Positions 11,231 to 25,000 are shown, counted from the stretch's first letter. The stretch is DNA of 64,000 nt from Zootoca vivipara (GCF_963506605.1 NC_083292.1:15004001-15068000); one strand, 5' to 3'. Notes: generated by a model not told the origin, from the letters alone. Translations and numbers: made by a program.

Positions 11231-14200
11231 GGCCAGGATGATTTCCACTGCAGCCCCTCAAAACACTTTTTAAGGACTTGGAGGTGCGGCTGGCATCAGC
11301 AGCATCCTCATTACTATTATTTACCCCCTTCATCCGAAGATCGCAGGGCGGTTCACAATGCAATCATACAAAAAAGGGAACACAAATGCATAATCAAAGA
11401 ACCAACCAATAGCCCCACCCCAAATACATTTAAAAGGCCATAAACTTACTTAATCAGCCAAAGTCCTCGTTATGGAGGAGCGCTTTTGCCTGGCGCCTAA
11501 AGATATGTAATGAAGGCGTCAGGTGAGCCTCCCAGGGGAGAGCATTCCACACGTGGGGAGCCACCCCAGAAAAGGCCCGTTTTTGTGTTGCCACCCTCCA
11601 GACTTCTCGAGGGAGCACATGAAGACGGGCCTCAGAGGATGATTGCAGGATCCAGGTCAGTTCATATGGGGTTCATATGGATTTATTATTATTTTTATTG
11701 AATTTATATACTGCCCTATACCCACAGGTCTCAGGGCAGTTCACAGAATAAAATCAGAATATAAAACCACAAATACATGAATCAAAATAAAAACAACAAC
11801 CAATAAAAGAATAACCCCGTCCTTGGTCCTTAAGGTATTGTGGTAAATGGAACAGCAGGACGCTGTTAAGTCGGTGTCAGTAGCAGCACTGGGAGAGAAG
11901 TGATTAACTCATTTCAGGATGTTTTTGTGATCAGAATTACGCACAATAATTCCCACCACCATAAATTATGAAAGCATTTAATCACCTCTTCCTGTTCTTT
12001 GGCTGTAGTCATCTTCACGGCACTCCCCCAATTGTGTTTCTTTTTTTTTAAAAAAAATTTAATAAACTAATATGGCAGGAGACTAATCCCTTGCAGTGTT
12101 GCCCAGTGTTTTTATAGCTAATTTCTCTCAGCATCTCTCCTGCCCCCATGCAGTACTATGATTATAACACCACTGGTCTACTTTGCAGGGCTGTGGTCAG
12201 TCAGAGCTCACCCCACCCTCTGTGTATTATCCATGTTGTGGCAATCTCCCAAAGTGTTCCAGAAACTTCCCCTGGTCCAAACCTCTATTGTGGTTTTCAA
12301 CTGGATAAGAATAGGCAAAAATTAAAATACAGTGGTACCTTGGGTTACAGACGCTTTAGGTTACAGACTCCACTAACCCAGAAATAGTACCTCGGGTTAA
12401 GAACTTTGTTTCAGGATGAGAACAGAAACCACTGTACAGCAAATCTATGTCTTAACCACCCACCTAAAAATGAAAAATGAAGGTGCCCAATTTAACTTTG
12501 GGGGAAGGAGTTCCACTGTTGGGGTGCTACCACCAAAGAAAACCCTTGTTAGTGGAGTACTGAAACCATTGTGAAATCCACAGGTATCTCGGTGACAAAG
12601 ACAATGACCTCGAAGACCACTCGCAAGTGCTCTTGCGACAGCTGCAGGAACGCATAAGAGCTCGACAGCAGCAGAAGCAGCAGCAGCAGCAGGATGATCA
12701 CATGCCTGCAGAAAGTGGACCAGATAATGAAATGCCTGACTTGGACTTAGAGAAAAAAGCAAAGCAGGAGTCCAGAAAGAGGAAGCAGACTGAGGAATCC
12801 CCTTTAATAGGAGGCCATAGAAAGAGAAAGAAGAAATTATGCACTGAAGGGGGTGAAGGTATGGAAGAGAAAGACGGTGATCCTAGTCTAAGAAGAAGTA
12901 AAACAAGTGGAGAGGAATCCAAAACACCACAAGGAAGGACTGATGGAGGGGAAGGTAAAATAAATTGCGGGTGGAAACTGGGAGCTACATTCAGTCTCTG
13001 TCATTTCTGGGCAGCGCTCAGTCAACAAAATGATAGTATCTGCTCAGGCGCACCCCCGAAAAATCAGGCCAGTGATGCTCATCTTTTTAGAGATAGGAAG
13101 GCACAGTCTAAGAATAAATGTGTACCATAAAGATTGGCTCTGACTTCTGGAATGAAGCGAAGGGCTGTAGAGCACCTGCTTTGCATGCAGAAGGTTCCAG
13201 GTTCAGTCTGGGATATCCTGGCAGGGTTGGGGGTGTCCTCTGTCTGGAGAGCCTCTGCCAGTCAGTGTAAACTAGGAGTGGGGAACTCCTGACCTTCCAG
13301 ATGTTGCCAGACTACAATCTCCCAGCAGCCCTATGTAGCATGGTCAATGGCCAGGGATGATGGGAGTTGTAGTTCAGCAACATCTCGAGGACCAAAGGTT
13401 CCTCACACTCATTGTAGACAAAACTGAGCTAGATAGACCCTAGTGGTCTGACTCAATCTAAGGCAGTGTTTCCCAACCTTGTGCCTCCAGCTGTTTTGGG
13501 ACTACAACTCCCATCATCCCTAGCTAGCAAGGCCAGTGGTCAGGAATGATGGGAATTGTAGTCCGAAAACAGCTGGAGACACAAGGTTGGGAAACACTGA
13601 TCTAAGGCATCTTCCTAATGAGAATCATAATTCAGGAAGAGTTTATTTATTGAAATTGTTTTTGGCCTACTCTTCATCTGAGAAGGACTCCCTGAGTGGC
13701 TTACCGTATTCAATAATAACACCATATCTGTCCAGGAGAAGCCACCAATAGAGATTTCTGCTTCCCCAGTGTGGTGTGTTCAGCAAAACTCCTGTTGTGA
13801 TCTCATGAGTCACTTTCACCCACCTTCTCTTGCCTCTTGTGTGAGCAGTGGCTGGTGTGGATTAGCCCTCACTTCTCCCCTTGAGACTCCCACTTGCTAT
13901 AAAGTGAGCAGCTGCCTGCTTCTTTGGCTCTGTTGATTGGCACGAGGAAGGGTGGGGTGAGCGGGGGGGGGGGGAGGAACGGGACAAACTCCTTTCTGTG
14001 CATTTTTGGGGCCCTTTCCCACCTTGGGCCCAACCATCCCCCCCACCCCCAGCTCACCTTTCCCTCTCTCTTTTTGAAAATGCCACAAGCACGCCTTCTT
14101 CTTAAACTCAGGCCGCTTGTCTTGTTCATGTTGCTTTTACCAGGAAGTGAAATTAAGTTAGATAGCCATCTAGAAAATGACAGCTCAGCTGGAGAGAGGA

Positions 14201-17200
14201 AGGATGGCTTGGAATCCAGAGCAAACGAGAGCCACGGTGAAGAGGAGGAGACGCTGAAGTCGCCAGAGGATCCAAAGGAAACCCCCCCACCTCCCAACAC
14301 AATTGTTATTGGCGACTGGGGTCTGAAGGCAGCGCAGAAGAAGAAGAAGGTAGCTCACTTAAGGCTTGAGCTGATAGTCTGTTCTCAACATGCTTTGTCA
14401 AAGGCTCAGCCACACTGCTCTGCTGTGAGGTCAGTGATGCTTCTTTACTGAAGCAACCCTTGGAGGGTCAAGGTGACAGCTGGGTTTGGCTATCTGTTCA
14501 TTGCAGGGATTGGAAACCTGTGGTGCTCCCTAGATGATGCTGAACTACAATTCCCATCATCCCTGAACATTGGTCATAGCGGCTGTGACTGATGGGGGCT
14601 GGAATCCAATAGCTGGAGGGCTGCAGATATCCCCCTCCCCACCGCTAATGTTCATATTAATAATAAGCACATGTATAGCTTGGGACCCAGGTGGCGCTGT
14701 GGTTAAACCACTGAGCCTAGGGCTTGCTGATCAGAAGGTTGGCGGTTCGAATCCCTGTGACGGGGTGAGCTCCCGTTGCTTGGTCCCAGCTCCTGCCAAC
14801 CTAGCAGTTCGAAAGCACATCAAAATGCAAGTAGATAAATAGGAACCGCTACAGCGGGAAGGTAAACGGCGTTTCCATGTGCTGCTCTGGTTTGCCAGAA
14901 GCGGCTTTGTCATGCTGGCCACATGACCTGGAAGCTGTACGCCGGCTCCATCGGCCAATAATGCGAGATGAGCGTGCAACCCCAGAGTCGGTCACGACTG
15001 GACCTAATGGTCATGGGTCCCTTTACCTTTACCTTATAGCTTGCTTCATATCACAGAGCCATCAAAGCCTTGGTTTGGTGCCTGAGCATAGCACCCTTTT
15101 AATTCCTTTACCCCATTAGTTTCCTCTCTTTTTCGACAACCGGGACCAAACCTTGTTGAAGCTCAATAGAGGGAGATTCCATGGAAGCAAAACCTTTCAG
15201 CTGGGACATTGGGCCTGGATTTGCCCTCAGGGTGGAGTTGCAATGTTCCTTGTGGCATCTTGTGTGGGGGCAGAGGTGTGTGCGCGCCTGCAGTTCTCTT
15301 GAGTCCACAGTTCCAGCATCACATGTGTGTCTGTCATTTCCAGGTGGAGCCTCTTCTGCCACGCTGGCTGGCTGAACCTAAGTTGGTCCAGAGGCGGATC
15401 AAAGAGAATGTTGTCCCACTCCAAGATGTTCCAGTAATCCATCCAAAATTGAGGAAGAAACTGCAAGCAAATGGAATAGAGTCTTTGTTTCCAGGTATCA
15501 TCATAGTGGGATTTCCCCCCCCCCCTCTTCTATGCTTTTAAACCCGTATTTAGAAGATGGCCAGAGTTTGGGAGATGGATGGATACCAATGGTTTATGCC
15601 TAGCAGACAGGGACCTCTGCTCTTTAAATGAACGTTGATGGGAGTCGCTCCCATTGGTGCTTCAGTTGTAACCTCTCTGCAGTGTTTGATGTGGTGTCAA
15701 ACTGAGGAAGCACAGTTTTATCCACAGCAAATTATTTAGCTGGGCTAGAATGTCAATGAAATACCTGGATGTAAACGTGGACCTGCACCTCTCATCCCAC
15801 AGCAAGTTCCACCTCAAGTGTGTGGATCCATTCGAATGTGATGAGAGAGAAGCAACCCCACCTTTCTCAGAACTCTGGTTGCAAAGGAGCCAGAGGGCTG
15901 TAGGTATCCTTCACGACACCATTTAATAAATTCTGCCCAGAAATAATGAGCCAGCTGCTGGCCCTGGCCCTGGACCTTTGTTCTGGGTGCTCCAGGAATC
16001 TCTCTATAAAGAGATCAAGGGTGATTCCCCAAGACACCTAAGTGCCCAGAAATACTTTCCATAGGGCCACCCCCCTCCACTTCTCATGGCAATTCCAAGC
16101 TCTCTCTCTCTTGTATGGTGAGGCTAGGCTGGAGTTGACATGTCTGGAGAGAAGACTTAAAAGTGGATTTATTGATGGAATGTGAAGCATATAAACGTAA
16201 TAATAATAATAATAATAATTGTCACAGTGGCCGGAGTGGACTACTTCAGAGTAACGACGCTACGCAGCTCTGCATTTTATTCTTTTATTGGTGCTGCGTA
16301 TTTACAGTGCTCAAGTCATTGCTATTTACACGGAGCGATGTTGTCAGTCTGTTTCAGAACCTCCTAATGGCTTTTGGCGCGTCTTTCTCCAACACAAAAG
16401 CTTTGGCAGACCCATCCTCTTGCCCCTCCTCTTCCTGCGTAATTCTGGAGTTGGAGGGATGGGTCTTCCCCCCTTGCTTGCCCCTTCCTGTCCCACCTGG
16501 GACCCTGGCTCCTCTACCTTGCCTGAGCCTCGGACACGACTTCCTGCTTCCCCACTGGAATCGGAACTCTCCCTGCTTTCCCCTTTGCTCGGGGACGGGC
16601 TTGAACTCAGGAGGGGAGGGACTTCGCGATATCCCCTGTCCCTCACATCCACCCCCCTCCCAAGCTCTCCTTCACCCCTCCCCAGGCCCCCCCCATGTGT
16701 CGGTGACGACTGGAAGCCTAAGAACTCAGTGCTCTCCGAGCCCGTTGGTGTGAATACCTCCCCCCAGTCCTGCGAGCCCCCCCCTTCCGCCTGGGCGGAC
16801 GGGAATCCCAAAAAGTCCGTGGCGTCAGAGCTGGTGGGGGTAAAAACGTTCTGCCAATCTGCTCCTTCCTCTGACTGGGTGGATCTCGGTGACACCCATA
16901 CCTCATCCTCTGGTTCCTCAAACTCCGCTTCCCAGCGCCATGGTGAGCTGCTCTCCCGTGCCTCCTCCTCCTCCCCCTCCCTTTCCATGTGCCAGGGCTT
17001 GGGTCTGTGGGGAAAGAGGGCGTGAAATTCTTCCACCAAGAATTCCTCCTGTATCTGAGTGGCTGGGACCCATTCATTCTGGGACGGTGGAGCATCCTCC
17101 CATGCCATGAGGTACTCCAGTCCCCCCACCCCCCACCTTGAATCCAGGATGGCCGTGGCCTCATTGAGTTGCTCCCTGCCTTCCCTCTCCCCCCCTCCCT

Positions 17201-20200
17201 CGGGGGTTTGTTCGCTGTCTCGGAGCCTGCTGCTTTCCCTGTACGGCGACAGCAGCGATCTATGAAACACTGGATGCACCCTCATGTCCTCTGGCAGTGC
17301 CAGCCTGTATGCCACCGGGTTTACCTGTTGCGTGACCGTGAAGGGGCCCAGCCTTTTGGGTGCCAGCTTTTTGCACCTCCCTCTGGTGGGAAGGCCCTCC
17401 GAGGACAACCACACCTTGTCCCCCACCCTGATGACCTCCCCTTGTCGCCTGTGGCGATCTGCCCCCTTTTTGTACGCTTCCTTGGCCCTCTCCAAGTGTT
17501 CTCTGAGCTGCTGGTGCACCGTCTCCAGTTCCTCTGCCCAATCCTCAGCCTGTGGGCCCTCCTCCTCCTCCTCCTCCCTCTCCCTCTCTGGGAAAGATCT
17601 GAGGTCGCGCCCGTAATTGGCCTTAAAGGGCGACACCCCTGTGGAGACGTGCACTGCATTGTTGTAGGCAAATTCTGCTAGTGGCAAGCGATCCACCCAG
17701 TCCGTTTGCCGCTGGCTGACGTAGCATCTCAGGTACTGCTGCAGAATGGCGTTGACCCTCTCCGCTTGTCCGTTGGTCTGCGGGTGTCTAGCCGTCGACA
17801 AGCTGACCTCCACCTGCAGGAGGTTCATGAGCCGCCGCCAGAACCTGGAAACAAATTGGCGGCCACGATCCGAAATAACCCTTAAAGGTAATCCATGCAG
17901 TCTGAAAATGTGATCAACAAACAGTTTGGCTGTCTCTTCTGCCGAGACTGCCCTGGCACACGGTATAAAGTGACACATTTTGGACATAAGGTCCACCACC
18001 ACCAACACTGCAGTCTTACCCCTGGACGAAGGCAGATCTGTGATGAAGTCCATGGACACCACTTCCCACGGCCTGTGTGGTGTGGCTAAGGGCTCCAGCA
18101 ACCCTGGTGGCGCTGCTCTGACCACCTTCGCCCGCTGGCAGGTGGTACAGCCCCTTACATAGTCTCGAACATCTTCCCGCACCCCTGGCCACCAGAAGTG
18201 TCTCATGACTAGGTGAGCGGTTTTGTCCCTTCCAAAATGCCCCGCTGTAGGGTTGTCGTGCATCTGCTTGAGGACCGTACGTCGAAGCTGGGTGGTGGGT
18301 AGGTACAGCGCACCCTTGTAGAAAAGCAGCCCTCTGCGTTCTGCAAAGTCTTTTGCCTGCTCCCTCCCCCCTCTCAGTTCTCTGAAGATGCGGTTGGCAA
18401 ATTCATCCGCTGCCGTCAGTGCTGTGAGTTCTGCCTCGCTCACCACAGCTGCTCCGCAGGACCATGCCGACGGGGGGAAAATGTGCCTTGGGGCTGGTGG
18501 CGCCTCCTCCTCCATGTACTCTGGCTTGCGGGAGAGGGCATCCGCCCTGACATTCTGCTCCCCCGGGATGTAGTGTATGGAGAAGTTGAAGTTCGAGAAG
18601 AACTCTGCCCACCGTATCTGCCGCTGGTTGAGCACCCTGGCAGTTCTCCAGAACTCCAGGTTCTTGTGGTCTGTGCACACCTGGATGGGGTGCTTCGCGC
18701 CCACCAGGAAGTGTCGCCAGTGCTGGAACGCAGCGTAGATCGCAAGAAGTTCCCTATCAAACACTGTGTAGTTGCGTTCAGGCTGTGTCAGCTTCCTGGA
18801 GAAGAAGGCACAGGGTCTCCACTCCCTGTTGGCGTCCAGTTGCAACAAAATTGCGCCCACAGCTTTTTCAGAAGCATCAGTCTCAATGCGTAGGGGCGCG
18901 TCCTGCACCACATGGAACAGGTTTTGGTCTGAGGCGAACACTCTCTTGAGGCTTTCGAACGCTGCTTGCGCCTCTGGTGTCCACTTGAACTTCTGCTTGC
19001 CTCTCAGGCAGTCCGTGATGGGAGCCGTAACGCGAGAGAAGTTCTTGATGAACTTCCTGTAGAAGTTAGCGAAGCCTAGTAGGCGTTGGGCATCTTTGCG
19101 CGTCCTGGGGCTGTGCCAGTCCAGGATGGCCTGCACCTTGTCCTTGTCCATCGCCAGCCCCTTGTCTGACAGCTTGTAGCCCAGGAAGTCCACCTCTTTG
19201 GTGTGAAACTTGCACTTCTCCAGCTTCACATACAGGTGGTTCTCCTTCAGGCGTTGCAACACCTCTCTGACATCTTTCACATGCTGCACTGGGTCATTCG
19301 AGTAGATAAGGATGTCATCTAGGAAGACCAAGCATTTCCTGAAGAGGAGGGACCCCAGGACGTGGTGCATGAAGGCCTGGAAGCATGCTGAGCCCCCTTG
19401 CAAACCGAAGGGCATCACCAGATATTCAAAAGAGCCCAGAGGCGTGAACATCGTGGTTTTCCATTCATCTCCTTCCCGGATCCTGATCAAGTTGTACGCC
19501 CCCCTTAGGTCCAGCTTGGTGAAAATCTTGCCCCTGCGTGCCGCTGTCAGGAGATCATCCACTCTGGGCATGGGGAAAGCCACGGGCTCTGTCACCGAAT
19601 TCAGCCGTCTAAAGTCCACCACAAGACGGCGCTGTTGCGTGTCTTTCTTGTCCACCCAGAAGACCGGGCTGCCCCCTGCTGCCTTGCTTTCCCTTATGAA
19701 CCCCCGCTTGAGGTTCTTGTCGATGAAAGCGCGCAGATCCTCCAGCTCCTGGTCAGACATGGCGTACAGCTTGGCTGGGGGTATCGTCGCCCCTGGCACC
19801 AGGTTGATCTGGCAGTCAAAAGGCCTGTGCGGGGGTAGGTGGTCGGACTCCGCTTCGCTGAAGACCTCCTGCAGGTCCCAGTACTGCTTGGGTATTGCCT
19901 CACCCCCTTTGATATGCATGGTGGCCACCGTGGCTATCGGAGGCCCCTCCCCTGGTTGGTGCTGCATGCAATGTTCCAGACAAAAGTCTGACCCAAACGT
20001 GATGCACCTCTGGTGCCAACTGATGGAGGGGTCGTGGCGCGCCAGCCAGCTCATGCCCAAGACGATGGGGGGGTCTGAGATGGTGGTGACGTTGAACGCC
20101 AGTGTCTCTGAGTGCCTTCCCACCGTCATTCTCATGGGGGGGGTTTGATGTGTGATGGCCCCGCCCAGCAGCTCCCTGCCGTCAATGGTTGCTACGTGCA

Positions 20201-22031
20201 GAGGAAAATCCAACTGCAAAAGCTGGATTTGGTGCTCTTCTGCAAAGCTTCTCGAGAAGAAGTTGGCGGACGCCCCACTGTCAATTAAGGCGAGGACCGT
20301 CAGGGGATAGCCATTTGGGAGCGTTAGCGTCACTTCTAGAACCACTCCTGCTCTGGGAGGGGTGGGCTGGCTCTGCACCTCTCTGTGCGGGTGGGCGGGC
20401 TGGGGCTGTTGTCTGCTGACTGTGCCTGGCTGCTGCCCCTTGTCTCCTGCAGCCAGGCTTTCCCGTTTCCCTGCTGTGGTGCTGCGTCAGTGGGGGAGGG
20501 CACCACCGTTCCCGCCTTTCCTTGCCACTCCCTGCGATGTGGGCAGTCTCTGACGAGATGCTGGGGTGAGTTGCAGAGAAAGCAATTCCCGCCCCTTCCC
20601 TCCTTGCGCCTTGGCGCCGCTGGGGTTTGAAAAGCCCGCGCGCGCGCGCTATCAATCTGCATGGGCTCCTGGTCCTGGCTGGCTCCAGGCGTGGCCTGAA
20701 AGGGTTGTTGAGGGAGTGGCTTCTCCTGCGACCGTGGGAACCAAGCCCGCTTTGCGCGCGTCGCTTGCTTGTCGTTCCACCGGGATTCCTGCCTCACCCC
20801 CACCGCCAGAGCTGCTTTGCTCAGCTGATCCATAGTACTGGGCTTTGGACCTCTCGAGAGTTCATCCTTCACCTCCTCGCTCAAACCCAAGTAAAACGCA
20901 GCTTGCATGGGAGGCGAATCCAAAACCCACCCCAGTCTGTGCACCAGCATGGTGAATTTCGCCCAATATGCGCGAACTGTCATATTTCCTTGGCGTAAAT
21001 TATGCAGTTCCTCCTTAGTCTGGTCCAAATGACTATCGGACGAATACATCGTCCTCAAACCTTCTAGAAATTGTTGGACATTTTTCATGCAAGGATTCTT
21101 GGTTGCGATTAATGGTCTTAGCCACTCCCTGGCTGCTCCGGTGAGATGTTCCACAATAAACGCTACTCTGTGCTCATCATCGGGGAACTCATTCTGGTGC
21201 AGCTCAAGAGCATACACGATCTCAGTCTCAAAGCCCTGAAACTCCTTCGGGTCTCCATTGAACTTGCTTACAAGGGTCCCTGCTCTCCTTCCTGGCAGCA
21301 CTTGGACTTGGGGAGCCCCTCCCGCCTTGTTTTTCTCTGCATCCAGCTTGTTTTGGAGGTCTACCGCCACCGCCCTTAAATGCTGCTCTTTTTCCTGGAG
21401 CTCTCTCACCTGTTCCGCAAGTTGTAGCCGGTCGTCCTGGACCTTCTTAGTCTCCTCTTTAGCTGCCTTCAATTCTCCCTGCGCCTGCAGCGACAGCTGT
21501 TGCAGTTCTAGCTGGGCTTGCTCAGCGATCTGCCGCCACTTCTCCGCCTCGGACACGCTCATCCCGGCAACTCCGAAGTAGCCCAAAAATGATTAGGAGG
21601 TTGCTGTCACAGTGGCCGGAGTGGACTACTTCAGAGTAACGACGCTACGCAGCTCTGCATTTTATTCTTTTATTGGTGCTGCGTATTTACAGTGCTCAAG
21701 TCATTGCTATTTACACGGAGCGATGTTGTCAGTCTGTTTCAGAACCTCCTAATGGCTTTTGGCGCGTCTTTCTCCAACACAAAAGCTTTGGCAGACCCAT
21801 CCTCTTGCCCCTCCTCTTCCTGCGTAATTCTGGAGTTGGAGGGATGGGTCTTCCCCCCTTGCTTGCCCCTTCCTGTCCCACCTGGGACCCTGGCTCCTCT
21901 ACCTTGCCTGAGCCTCGGACACGACTTCCTGCTTCCCCACTGGAATCGGAACTCTCCCTGCTTTCCCCTTTGCTCGGGGACGGGCTTGAACTCAGGAGGG
22001 GAGGGACTTCGCGATATCCCCTGTCCCTCAC

Positions 22032-22064
<33 letters not shown>

Positions 22065-25000
22065 TTTATTTATACCCCGCCCATCTGGCCGGGTTCCCCC
22101 AGCCACTCTGGGCGGCTTCCAACAAAACATTAAAATACAGAAATCAAACATTAAAAGCTTCCCTAAACAGAGCTGCCTTGAGATGCCTTCTAAAGGTCTG
22201 GTAATTGTTGTTCTCTTGGACCTCTGGTGGGAGGGCATTCCACAGGGTGGGTGCCACTACCGAGAAGGCCCTCTGCCTGGTTCCCTGTAACTTGGCTTCT
22301 CGTAGCGAGGGAACCGCCAGAAGACCCTCAGCACTGGACCTCAGTGTCCGGGCAGAACGATGGGGGTGAAGACGCTCCTTCAGGTATACTGGACCGAGGC
22401 CGTTTAGGGCAGGGGTCAGCAAACTTTTTCAGCAGGGGGCCGGTCCACTGTCCCTCAGACATGTGGGGGACCGGACTATATTTTGAAAAATAATATGAAG
22501 AAATTCCTATGCCCCACAAATAACCCAGAGATGCATTTTAAATAAAAGGACACATTCTACTCCTGTAAAAACATGCTGATTCCCAGACTGTCCGTGGGCC
22601 GGATTTAGAAGGCGATTGGGCCGCATCCAGCCCCCGGGCCTTAGTTTGGGGACCCCTGGTTTAGGGTTTTAAAGGTCAGCACCAACACTTTGAATTGTGC
22701 TCGGAAACGTACTGGGAGCCAATGTAGATCTTTCAAGACCGGTGTTATGTGGTCTCGGCGGCCACTCCCAGTCACCAGTCTAGCTGCCGCATTTTGGATT
22801 AATTGCAGTTTCCGGGTCACCTTCAAAGGTAGCCCCACGTAGAGTGCATTGCAGTAGTCCAAGCTAGAGATAACTAGAGCATGCACCACTCAAACATTTG
22901 GAAGGTGAAAAAGTGTAAGCAAAAGAGAAAAATGGCTTGGTTTTCTTGCTGGTGGCCACCAAGTCCTTGGCAGGAGAGAAAGTAGTATACAAATTCCAAA
23001 GCCGCCTTTAAACCTTTCCCACTCCTCTTGCCCTCTTCCTTACCCTTTAAGTGGTGGGGGGAATGTTATTGGGGTGTGTGCTGATCCTGCCTGCTCTTTT
23101 TCTTCAGTTCAGGCCGAGGTGATTCCAGCCATCTTGGAAAGCGGGTTTTTGGCCGGGAGAGGTGGCTACCAGCCCAGTGATATCTGCGTCTCAGCCCCCA
23201 CCGGCAGTGGCAAGACCCTGGCTTTTGTCATTCCGGTGGTGCAGGTGAGTTTTGGGTGAATTAAGAGAGCTGCTGGCTGGTGTGTGTTCTGTGCCAAAGT
23301 AGCCTCCAGCTGTGAAACCCAGTGTGTGCAATTACAAGGGGTAGTACCAGGCTGGTGAATTTGGAAAGTGCTGTCTCAAAGGACCCCCCAGCACTTGGGG
23401 CGCATGGAGATGTGACTTAATGGGACTGTGTGTCCATTTAGCTCTCTTGGTTGCTTTTCCCACACCCCATTTGTGTAGACTGAGGAGCAGGAGACACCCA
23501 TCTCTTCCTGATCGCTGGCCTTTGTATTTTCAGGCTCTGTTAGACCGAGTCGTCTGCCGTGTGCGAGCTCTGGCCGTCCTGCCCACCAAGGAACTGGCCC
23601 AGCAGGTGCGTTACAGAGGAGAGATTTGGTGGTGGTGGTGGTGGTGGTGGGTGTTCTGCCTAGGGCAGTGTTCTTTCTGGATCTGGAGCCAATAAGCATC
23701 CCGGTGGGTGAAGGAAAACCAATGCTTTATTTGTGTAAGGTCAAAGAAATAACAGCAGGCATACATAATGCAAATAACGGCTTACCAGACAGGAGTTACA
23801 CACAATCTCCCCTTCAGCTGTCCGGAGCCCCAGGTAGAGCAGTGAGAGAGACCCCGGCCGACAACATCGCGTACCTCAATCTGTGAAGAAGCTCACTGAG
23901 CCTCTTCAGCCTACAGCTTTTATAGCCCACTTTGATGTAATTGAGTGCACCTGGTTAGTAGGCATCACTCATGGTCAGCCCAGGATACTGGGTACGACTA
24001 ATGAGGAGCAGCTGAGAGTCTCCCACTCACGGCAACTGGGTATCCTCCCCACTAGCCAATCAGCACTTGGAACACAGGAGACCCAGGAAACTCCTGACAC
24101 ATTTATTATTATTATTATTACTTATTATTTATACCCCGCCCATCTGGCTGGGTTTCCCCTGCCACCCTGGGCGGCTTCCAACAAATACCAAAATACATTA
24201 AAATATCACAGATTAAAAACTTCCCTAAACAGGGCTGCCTTTAGGTGTTTTCTAAATGTCAAGTAGTTGTTTATCTCCTTGACCTCCAATGGGAGGGCGT
24301 TCCAAAGGGCGGGCGCCACTACCGAGAAGGCCCTCTGCCTGGTTCCCTGTAGCTTTGCTTCTCGCAGTGAGGGAACCGCCAGAAGGCCCTCAGCGCTGGA
24401 TCTCAGTGCCCGGGCTGAACGATGGGGGTGGAGACGCTCCTTCAGGTTTATAGGACCGAGGCCGTTTAAGGCTTTAAAGGTCAGCACCAACGCTTTGAAT
24501 TGTGCTCGGAAACGTACTGGGAGCCAATGTTGGTCTTTTAGGACCGGTGTTATGTGGTCTTGGCGGCCGCTCCCAGTCACCAGTCTAGCTACCGCATTCT
24601 GGATTAATTGCAGTTTCCGGGTCACTTTCAAAGGTAGCCCCACGTAGAGCGCATTGCAGTAGTCCGAGTGGGAGATAACTAGAGCATGCACCACTCTGGT
24701 GAGACAGTCTGCGGGCAGGTAGGGTCTCAACCTGCGTACCAGATGGAGCTGGTAGACAGCCGCCCTGGACACAGAATTAACCTGTGTCTCCATGGACAGC
24801 TGTGAGTCCAAAATGACTCCCAGGCTGTGGCACCTGGTCCTTCAGGGCACAGTTATCCCATTCAGGACCAGGGAGTCCTCCACACACAGGTGTGTGAAAA
24901 GCAAATTATACTATCATAAATCAGCAAACCTTCAACCGGGGGTCATGTAAAAGAGAAAAGACATGTCACCTAACCAATTACAATGGTCTTCCGCGTTTCC

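What the first reader, a model, noticed from the sequence alone, without database searches (positions are those of the whole stretch)
16713..16859. Retrotransposon integrase tail carries two tandem LEDGF/TND-interacting-motif mimics (WxxVF-linker-[DE]FLGF)
Seen: after the chromodomain, Pol repeats a 19-aa motif with a 30-aa period, [19 protein letters not shown] (16859-16803) and [19 protein letters not shown] (16769-16713). The DNA copies differ at many synonymous positions while W, VFTPT and FLGF are kept, which points to protein-level constraint. Established (from memory): cellular partners of the LEDGF/p75 integrase-binding domain and other TFIIS N-terminal domains use this same bipartite architecture, a short helix ending in [IV]F, an acidic Ser/Thr linker tuned by CK2 phosphorylation, then FxGF. 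Examples are MLL1/KMT2A (FRAVF...EDEQFLGF), JPO2/CDCA7L (two tandem copies), POGZ and IWS1. Lentiviral integrases bind the same LEDGF domain through a different surface. Inference: this gypsy element may have evolved host-motif mimicry to tether its intasome to LEDGF/HDGFL2 or elongation factors on H3K36me-marked gene bodies. Its position in an intron of the housekeeping gene DDX51 is compatible, though it is a single site. I know of no description of this in an LTR retrotransposon.
Basis: partly seen in the sequence, partly recalled or inferred. Interest (0 to 1): 0.93.

Follow-up and report, generated by a model that had tools for sequence, protein, structure and literature searches.

The report
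LEDGF-binding-motif mimic in lizard retrotransposon integrase
A young, intact gypsy-type retrotransposon in a lizard gene intron carries, at the disordered end of its integrase, two conserved copies of the short peptide signature that cellular proteins use to dock onto the chromatin reader LEDGF/HRP2, which suggests (untested) that it steers its insertions by imitating host proteins.

Summary
Pol aa 1174-1192 and 1204-1222 (nt 16803-16859 and 16713-16769, minus strand) repeat D-W-x-x-V-F-T-P-T-x6-[DE]-F-L-G-F with a 30-aa period.

- **Selection:** 13 of 19 residues are identical between the copies, yet 11 of those 13 use different codons (pS 0.92, pN 0.20). This points to strong protein-level selection.
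- **Host element:** a 5,813-bp chromovirus (16220-22032) with identical 428-bp LTRs. It lies antisense in an intron of a DEAD-box helicase gene.
- **Family conservation:** the four closest relatives or relative groups found (several from Podarcis muralis, 56-62% identical over the matched integrase region) all carry one or two copies of W-x(1-3)-F, an 8-9 residue S/T/D/E linker with no basic residue, and F-x-G-F. The flanks around these motifs cannot be aligned. Ten other long chromovirus tails have no such motif.
- **Match to known motifs:** the pattern fits the published LEDGF/HRP2 IBD-binding consensus ([DE]-x-[ES]-x-F-x-G-F) and the bipartite TND-interacting-motif layout of helix, 8-16 aa acidic linker and FxGF.
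- **Structure:** AlphaFold2 predicts a disordered tail with helical turns at each W-x-x. The chromodomain keeps one of three aromatic-cage residues.

Binding and insertion preference could not be tested. No prior description was found. My reading is a new variant of integrase tethering by host-motif mimicry, about 55% likely.

The parts
16220..16647 (-). 3' LTR, 428 bp, TG..CA ends. Pol reads about 100 codons into it.
   Evidence: 100% identical to 21605-22032. The ORF ends at 16344.
21605..22032 (-). 5' LTR, 428 bp
   Evidence: A 5-bp ATAAT lies on both flanks (16215-16219 and 22033-22037), inside a simple AAT repeat, so it is weak evidence for a target-site duplication.
20336..21562 (-). gag (Retrotrans_gag / Ty3 capsid, CCHC knuckle). 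It overlaps pol by 43 nt and pol is in the -1 frame.
16344..20378 (-). pol ORF, 1344 aa: protease, RT, RNase H, integrase (H2C2, rve, SH3_Tf2-1), chromodomain, acidic tail
17022..17159 (-). Chromodomain (aa 1074-1119). Only one of the three HP1 aromatic-cage positions is aromatic.
   Evidence: Pfam PF00385, E 3.6e-6, 27.2 bits against a cut-off of 25.1. Alignment to HP1 chain 1kna_A shows W kept, with N and A at the other two cage positions. AlphaFold2 pLDDT above 90.
16887..16934 (-). Possible decayed first motif slot (aa 1149-1164): W-E-A-E-F, an acidic linker, then WVSP where relatives have FxGF
   Evidence: Inference from sequence pattern and position. In the tail alignment this stretch lies downstream of the relatives' first slot and is not aligned to it.
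16803..16859 (-). Motif copy 1 (aa 1174-1192): D-W-Q-N-V-F, 9-aa S/T/D linker, F-L-G-F
   Evidence: Helical turn predicted at aa 1175-1177. In related species the only listed coding change here is V1178I.
16770..16802 (-). 11-aa spacer between the copies ([11 protein letters not shown]), variable
   Evidence: The non-synonymous variants P1193 and A1195S in related species fall here.
16713..16769 (-). Motif copy 2 (aa 1204-1222): D-W-G-E-V-F, 9-aa S/T/E linker, F-L-G-F
   Evidence: Helical turn at aa 1205-1207. The only listed variant is synonymous (E1215).
16648..16665 (-). Polypurine tract directly upstream of the 3' LTR, also translated as the Gly-rich stretch of Pol
15340..15540 (+). Host helicase exon upstream of the element (..LPRWLAEP..), approximate limits
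23120..23245 (+). Host helicase exon downstream of the element (Q-motif region and motif I GSGKT), approximate limits. Later exons carry TPGR (26341), DEAD (27417), SAT (27924) and ARGID (30968).

Best explanation
The disordered C-terminal tail of this chromovirus integrase carries two copies of a bipartite short linear motif. It imitates the cellular IBD-binding motif, the FxGF-type TND-interacting motif found in MLL1, JPO2, IWS1, DPF3a and JIL-1. Each copy would bind the integrase-binding (TFIIS-N-terminal-type) domain of the H3K36me3 readers LEDGF/PSIP1 or HRP2/HDGFL2. The W and F of a short helix (positions i and i+4) would fill the first hydrophobic pocket. The acidic, phosphorylatable 9-residue linker would lie on the basic patch. 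FLGF would fill the second pocket. Two motifs per integrase, on a multimeric intasome, would give avid tethering to transcribed gene bodies. This would replace the methyl-lysine reading that the cage-deficient chromodomain has probably lost. What is shown: motif presence, protein-level constraint, clade-wide conservation, location in a predicted disordered region, match to the published consensus, and one intronic insertion. What is inferred: the binding partner, phospho-regulation and the effect on target choice.
For: Motif and period. Constraint between the copies: pS 0.92 against pN 0.20, with 11 of 13 identical residues encoded by different codons. Family conservation: P0001 has one copy. 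P0022, P0153 and P0154 have two copies each; the first copy of P0153 reads FEEF in place of FxGF. P0002, P0151 and P0152 have one copy each. Over the matched integrase region, P0001, P0002 and P0022 are 56-62% identical to the window element. In 10 of the 12 instances W, F, F, G and F are all kept; the two exceptions are the FEEF copy of P0153 and the P. muralis variant with a shorter W-x-F helix. Linker length is fixed at 8-9 residues, no linker contains a basic residue, and the flanks cannot be aligned. Position -2 from FxGF is always E, S or T, and position -4 is D or E in 9 of the 12 instances. This equals the published consensus D/E-x-E-x-F-x-G-F (PMC8022399) and S/E-x-F-x-G-F (PMC7337902). 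The DPF3a peptide used for HRP2 pull-down has the same layout: LF, a 10-aa S/T/D/E linker, then FHGF. JIL-1 has DFxGFDE (PMC6877644). The TIM definition is a helix, an 8-16 aa acidic linker with CK2 sites and FxGF, with FxGF essential for LEDGF and HRP2 (PMC9987994). MLL1 F129 and F133 (i, i+4) sit in the IBD pocket, paralleling W1175 and F1179. An S/T-x-x-D/E site lies in 7 of the 10 distinct linkers. AlphaFold2 gives tail pLDDT of about 50, with helical turns exactly at W-x-x of both copies. Specificity: among 85 relatives with a recognisable chromodomain end, the median tail is 20 aa. Of 18 tails of 60 aa or more, only the 8 members of this clade have FxGF. The chromodomain keeps one of three cage residues. 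In related species, the listed coding changes inside the motifs are one synonymous change and V to I. All five listed changes in the immediate flanks (one upstream, two in the spacer, two downstream) are non-synonymous. The copy lies in an intron of a helicase gene.
Against: No binding or docking test was possible. Position -2 is T in the window copies, whereas the published consensus has E or S. The window linkers are only mildly acidic (2 of 9 residues), although relatives have 4-6 of 9. The 9-aa linker is near the short end of the 8-16 range. The P. muralis P0002 group has a non-acidic linker and a shorter W-x-F helix. W is not reported, to my knowledge, as a helix anchor in known TIMs. Insertion-site evidence is a single locus. 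phmmer of the peptide against PDB chains found nothing, which is expected for a short motif. FxGF strings are common inside the folded RT of gypsy elements, so the four letters alone mean little.
Confidence: 0.55

Rival explanations
1. The motif is a real, selected short linear motif but its partner is not LEDGF/HRP2. It could bind another TFIIS-N-terminal domain (IWS1, TFIIS, Elongin A, MED26, PPP1R10). It could act as an acidic-aromatic histone-binding anchor of the kind used by histone chaperones. Or it could serve another step such as nuclear import, integrase stability or particle assembly rather than target choice.
For: Conservation and constraint show function but not the partner. TIM helix-plus-linker modules bind several TNDs. 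The tail is rich in acidic and aromatic residues overall.
Against: The invariant FxGF with its glycine, the fixed spacing, and E/S/T at -2 are the features that the literature ties specifically to the LEDGF and HRP2 domains. Other TNDs do not need FxGF.
Confidence: 0.3
2. The motif binds LEDGF/HRP2 but serves something other than integration targeting. For example, it might recruit elongation machinery to the element, or compete with host IBM proteins.
For: LEDGF partners act in transcription elongation. The motif is on Pol, which also exists outside the intasome.
Against: The motif is fused to the integrase C-terminus beside the chromodomain. That is the position where other LTR elements and retroviruses carry their targeting determinants (reviews listed).
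Confidence: 0.1
3. There is no function. The repeat is a tandem duplication in a low-complexity acidic tail that resembles the host motif by chance.
For: The tail is low-complexity. Short motifs arise easily. FxGF occurs often in gypsy RT domains.
Against: Synonymous sites between the copies are saturated while 13 of 19 residues are identical. Anchors are kept in four lineages that are 56-62% identical to the window element over the matched integrase region, with unalignable flanks. The motif is absent from all ten other long chromovirus tails. The shuffle frequency is 8.5e-5.
Confidence: 0.05

Closest known systems
Cellular IBD-binding motifs / FxGF-type TND-interacting motifs (MLL1/KMT2A, JPO2/CDCA7L, IWS1, POGZ, ASK, MED1, DPF3a; Drosophila JIL-1)
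   Same: Both are bipartite: a short helix with hydrophobic anchors, an S/T/D/E linker of 8-16 residues, then [DE]-x-[ES]-x-F-x-G-F in a disordered region. Tandem copies also occur in JPO2 and others.
   Different: Here the motif is carried by a retrotransposon integrase, not a host chromatin protein. W is the first helix anchor and T is at position -2. Binding is untested.
Lentiviral integrase-LEDGF/p75 tethering (HIV-1)
   Same: An integrase would be tethered through the same host domain to H3K36me3-marked transcribed genes.
   Different: This would therefore be convergent use of one host hub by a different surface.
Integrase tails that imitate host peptides: Ty5 targeting domain-Sir4, MLV integrase tail-BET ET domain, deltaretroviral integrase LxxIxE-PP2A-B56, Ty1 integrase C-terminus-AC40
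   Same: A short, disordered C-terminal integrase peptide docks on a host chromatin or transcription factor and sets target choice. In Ty5 this is phospho-regulated (from memory; the Ty1 and HTLV papers are listed).
   Different: The host partner and the motif class differ. None of these is a chromovirus or a vertebrate LTR retrotransposon.
Chromoviruses (Ty3/gypsy with an integrase chromodomain, e.g. MAGGY, Tf1, vertebrate Sushi-like elements)
   Same: Same element architecture and chromodomain position.
   Different: Typical relatives end about 20 aa after the chromodomain. This clade adds a tail of 90 to more than 200 aa with FxGF motifs and has a cage-deficient chromodomain.

Membership tests
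LEDGF/HRP2 IBD-binding motif (FxGF-type TIM) | F-x-G-F core | tested here: met
   FLGF twice in the window. FLGF, FVGF, FRGF, FEGF and FQGF in relatives, with one decayed FEEF.
LEDGF/HRP2 IBD-binding motif (FxGF-type TIM) | Acidic or phospho-acceptor residues at -4 and -2 ([DE]-x-[ES]-x-FxGF) | tested here: met
   The window has D-A-T-D-FLGF and E-S-T-E-FLGF, with T at -2 as a phosphorylatable variant. Relatives have E or S at -2. Position -4 is D or E in 9 of 12 instances. Consensus taken.
LEDGF/HRP2 IBD-binding motif (FxGF-type TIM) | Upstream short amphipathic helix with hydrophobic anchors | tested here: inconclusive
   W-x-x-V-F (i, i+4) parallels MLL1 F129/F133. AlphaFold2 places 3-residue helical turns at both W-x-x, but at pLDDT of about 50.
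LEDGF/HRP2 IBD-binding motif (FxGF-type TIM) | Flexible acidic/S/T linker of 8-16 residues | tested here: met
   Linkers are 8-9 residues in all 12 instances, contain no basic residue, and S/T plus D/E make up 6-9 of the residues. Range taken.
LEDGF/HRP2 IBD-binding motif (FxGF-type TIM) | Lies in an intrinsically disordered region | tested here: met
   Tail pLDDT is 46-58, against above 90 for the adjacent chromodomain.
LEDGF/HRP2 IBD-binding motif (FxGF-type TIM) | Direct binding to the IBD/TND, lost on F-to-A mutation | not testable with these tools
   No TND sequence could be obtained.
LEDGF/HRP2 IBD-binding motif (FxGF-type TIM) | Affinity raised by CK2 phosphorylation of the linker | not testable with these tools
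   Only consensus sites can be shown: S/T-x-x-D/E in 7 of 10 linkers, including both window copies.
Chromovirus (Ty3/gypsy LTR retrotransposon with integrase chromodomain) | LTRs; gag; pol in the order PR-RT-RNH-IN; chromodomain at the integrase C-terminus | tested here: met
Chromovirus (Ty3/gypsy LTR retrotransposon with integrase chromodomain) | Complete aromatic cage for methyl-lysine (group I chromodomain) | tested here: not met
   Alignment to HP1 chain 1kna_A: N at the Y24 position, W kept, A at the Y48 position (cage residue numbers from memory).

The most novel reading that the evidence does not exclude
A clade of lizard chromoviruses has replaced chromodomain-based targeting with bivalent, phospho-tunable mimicry of the cellular FxGF IBD-binding motif. 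Its integrase would dock on LEDGF/HRP2 exactly as MLL1 or JPO2 do. That would make it the first LTR retrotransposon known to use the LEDGF hub, and a case of convergence with lentiviruses through a different surface.
Probability: 0.5. Interest if true: 0.9.

Novelty: new variant of a known kind. Interest (0 to 1): 0.8.

Why it matters
Tethering of integrases to host chromatin factors explains where retroviruses and retrotransposons land. LEDGF tethering has so far been a lentiviral speciality. A 2023 study of fly LTR elements noted that no data support a LEDGF-integrase link for LTR transposons (PMC10018349). A vertebrate retrotransposon that copies the host's own LEDGF-docking peptide would show three things: convergent capture of the same hub by a different surface, a route by which chromoviruses can change target preference, and a natural minimal peptide tag that directs an integrase to transcribed gene bodies. 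The claim is directly testable with a 60-residue peptide and a recombinant domain.

Tried and rejected
- **Word-index protein searches:** searches on the tail returned nothing. The same index found relatives only when queried with P0022, so the blanks reflect the word filter and are not evidence of absence.
- **Other sequence searches:** phmmer of the motif peptide against PDB chains found no hit, as expected for a short linear motif. The metagenome contig scan found no relative. The ESM Atlas features search on the tail scored at most 0.78, which is uninformative.
- **Tools and papers unavailable:** The DNA of P0001 and P0022 could therefore not be fetched, and no cross-lineage dN/dS was computed. 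The papers of Tesina 2015, Sharma 2018 and Cermakova 2021 are not held, so the consensus was taken from papers that cite them.
- **Complex prediction:** Complex prediction was not run because no TND/IBD sequence was available from the window or from search results.
- **Earlier scan findings:** look-ups by sequence and by the combined words were blank.
- **Alternative motif classes considered and rejected:**
  - A retropepsin cleavage site at VF/TP is rejected because TP is not conserved in relatives.
  - A phospho-SIM is rejected because there is no run of three or four aliphatic residues.
  - FG-nucleoporin-like repeats are rejected because the order of residues is wrong.
  - A cis-acting DNA repeat near the PPT is rejected because the two DNA copies differ at nearly every synonymous site.
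  - Folding of the tail back onto the element's own chromodomain is not supported, because the monomer model shows no confident contact.

Full report
**Observation**

Translation of the minus strand of window:16344-20378 gives a 1344-aa Pol.
- aa 1174-1192 (nt 16803-16859)
- aa 1204-1222 (nt 16713-16769)

They are 30 aa apart and downstream of the chromodomain. No other instance occurs in the window.

**The element**

- Direct repeats at 16220-16647 and 21605-22032 are 428 bp long, 100% identical and end in TG..CA. They are flanked by ATAAT on both sides, although this lies inside an AAT simple repeat.
- Between them lie gag (Retrotrans_gag/Ty3 capsid, CCHC) and, in the -1 frame with a 43-nt overlap, pol.
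- Pol contains protease, RT, RNase H, integrase H2C2, rve, SH3_Tf2-1 and Chromo domains.
- A purine run abuts the 3' LTR.
- This is an intact, very young chromovirus-type Ty3/gypsy element of 5,813 bp.

**Location in the host gene**

The element lies antisense between two + strand exons of a DEAD-box helicase gene.
- Upstream exon: about 15340-15540, containing ..LPRWLAEP..
- Downstream exon: about 23120-23245, containing the GSGKT motif.
- Further exons carry TPGR, DEAD, SAT and ARGID motifs.
- From memory these peptides fit DDX51. That name was not tested here.

**Protein-level constraint**

- The two 19-codon copies share 13 residues. Eleven of those 13 are written with different codons. 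The other two are the single-codon W and one F.
- Nei-Gojobori counting gives 11 synonymous differences on 12 sites (pS 0.92, saturated). It gives 9 non-synonymous differences on 45 sites (pN 0.20).
- The duplication is therefore old relative to this insertion, and the amino-acid pattern has been held by selection.
- Strong divergence of the DNA copies may also be favoured because reverse transcriptases delete direct repeats. This is inference.
- Composition-preserving shuffles of the tail give one strict motif at 8.5e-5.

**Related species**

Logan contigs of three other species labels, and RNA reads of the source species, lie on the element.
- Among the best-supported variants listed, those inside the two motifs are one synonymous change (E1215) and V1178I.
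- The five listed variants in the immediate flanks and spacer are all non-synonymous: G1172, P1193, A1195S, H1228P and G1231.
- The sample is small and only 40 of 445 variants were shown.
- RNA reads are mostly on the LTR, in the orientation expected for sense transcripts in a standard stranded library. Most are 90-95% alike, so they come from other copies.

**Family**

An exhaustive phmmer search was run with integrase plus tail.
- The closest representatives are P0001 (59% identical), P0002 (62%) and P0022 (56%).
- Cluster look-up and a further search added P0151 to P0154. Several of these are named as Podarcis muralis proteins.
- All carry the same layout after the chromodomain: W-x(1-3)-F, a linker of 8-9 residues made of S/T/D/E with no K or R, then F-x-G-F.
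- There appear to be two slots. One lies directly after the chromodomain and one about 40 aa later.
- The P0022 group fills both slots. P0001 fills only the later slot and the P0002 group only the first.
- The window element has a decayed-looking stretch upstream (W-E-A-E-F, acidic linker, WVSP) and a duplicated later slot.
- Outside the anchors the tails cannot be aligned.
- Of 85 relatives with a recognisable chromodomain end, the median tail is 20 aa. Of the 18 tails of 60 aa or more, only the eight members of this clade contain FxGF. The other ten are basic or Pro-rich.
- FxGF strings inside the folded RT are common in gypsy elements and are unrelated to this motif.

**Comparison with the known motif**

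- A review of TFIIS N-terminal domains defines the TND-interacting motif as an obligate short helix, an acidic 8-16 residue linker rich in G, S and T (phosphorylated by CK2), and an optional FxGF. The FxGF is essential for the LEDGF and HRP2 domains (PMC9987994).
- The IBD-binding consensus is given as D/E-x-E-x-F-x-G-F (PMC8022399) or S/E-x-F-x-G-F (PMC7337902).
- In every instance of this clade, position -2 is E, S or T. Position -4 is D or E in 9 of 12 instances.
- MLL1 anchors its helix with F129 and F133 (i, i+4) and its second site with F148, L149 and F151. Here W1175/F1179 and F-L-G-F have the same pattern.
- The DPF3a peptide that pulls down the HRP2 IBD has the same layout as the window copies: LF, a 10-residue S/T/D/E linker, then FHGF.
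- Fly JIL-1 binds JASPer through DFxGFDE, and the authors consider the mode conserved across animals (PMC6877644).
- AlphaFold2 with a 6-row alignment gives a confident chromodomain (pLDDT above 90) and a disordered tail (about 50). Its only helical turns after the helix that follows the chromodomain (segment residues 70-84) lie exactly at W-x-x of each copy.
- S/T-x-x-D/E sites are present in 7 of 10 linkers.

**Chromodomain**

HMMER alignment to HP1 (1kna_A) shows only the central W of the three cage positions retained (cage numbering from memory). The P0002 group has lost even that W. A degenerate reader next to a newly acquired docking peptide fits a change of tethering strategy. This is inference.

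**Literature**

Full-text searches combining retrotransposon, LEDGF, FxGF, chromovirus, IBD-binding motif, gypsy and H3K36me3 found no description of such a motif in an LTR retrotransposon. One paper states that no data support an interaction of fly LEDGF with LTR-transposon integrases (PMC10018349). The library is incomplete, so absence is not proof.

**Limits**

- Insertion preference rests on one locus.
- A first-reader note reports a second copy with two motifs elsewhere in the genome. It was not verified.
- align_proteins printed a consensus line automatically.

**Verdict**

The motif is a conserved, selected short linear motif specific to a lizard chromovirus clade. Its best reading is mimicry of the cellular LEDGF/HRP2 docking motif for integrase tethering, at about 55%. 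A different partner or role is the main rival.

Noticed in passing
window 16344-16647 (minus strand): The Pol ORF continues about 100 codons past the PPT into the U3 part of the 3' LTR. Its end (..LLCW[KR][KR].. followed by a short S/D-rich tip) is shared with P0001 and P0022. Part of the LTR therefore seems to be coding, or at least conserved.
   Followed up: partly
window 17022-17159: The chromodomain retains only one of three aromatic-cage residues. The Podarcis P0002 group has R in place of that W.
   Followed up: partly
window 16857-16952: One contig of a related species (run X9) skips 96 nt, an in-frame 32 codons, ending just before W1175 of motif copy 1. This is a tail-length variant that keeps the motif (table 5).
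   Followed up: no
window 16271-16272: Thirty RNA-seq molecules begin here inside the LTR, about 50 nt from its outer end (table 6). This is a candidate polyadenylation site marking the R/U5 boundary of the minus-strand transcript.
   Followed up: no
window 22066-22891 and 24125-24696: Three collinear repeat blocks, 86-93% identical and about 2.06 kb apart, flank the helicase motif-I exon. They are probably two copies of an interspersed repeat.
   Followed up: no
window 21563-21604: Only about 42 nt separate the 5' LTR from the gag ATG, and there is no obvious TGG-type tRNA primer-binding site directly after the LTR.
   Followed up: no
window 12564-13127 (+): A long open frame with a Gln-rich run followed by an acidic and basic K/R-rich stretch (..RYLGD.., poly-Q, KRKK) lies upstream on the helicase strand. 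It is likely the first coding exon of the host gene.
   Followed up: no
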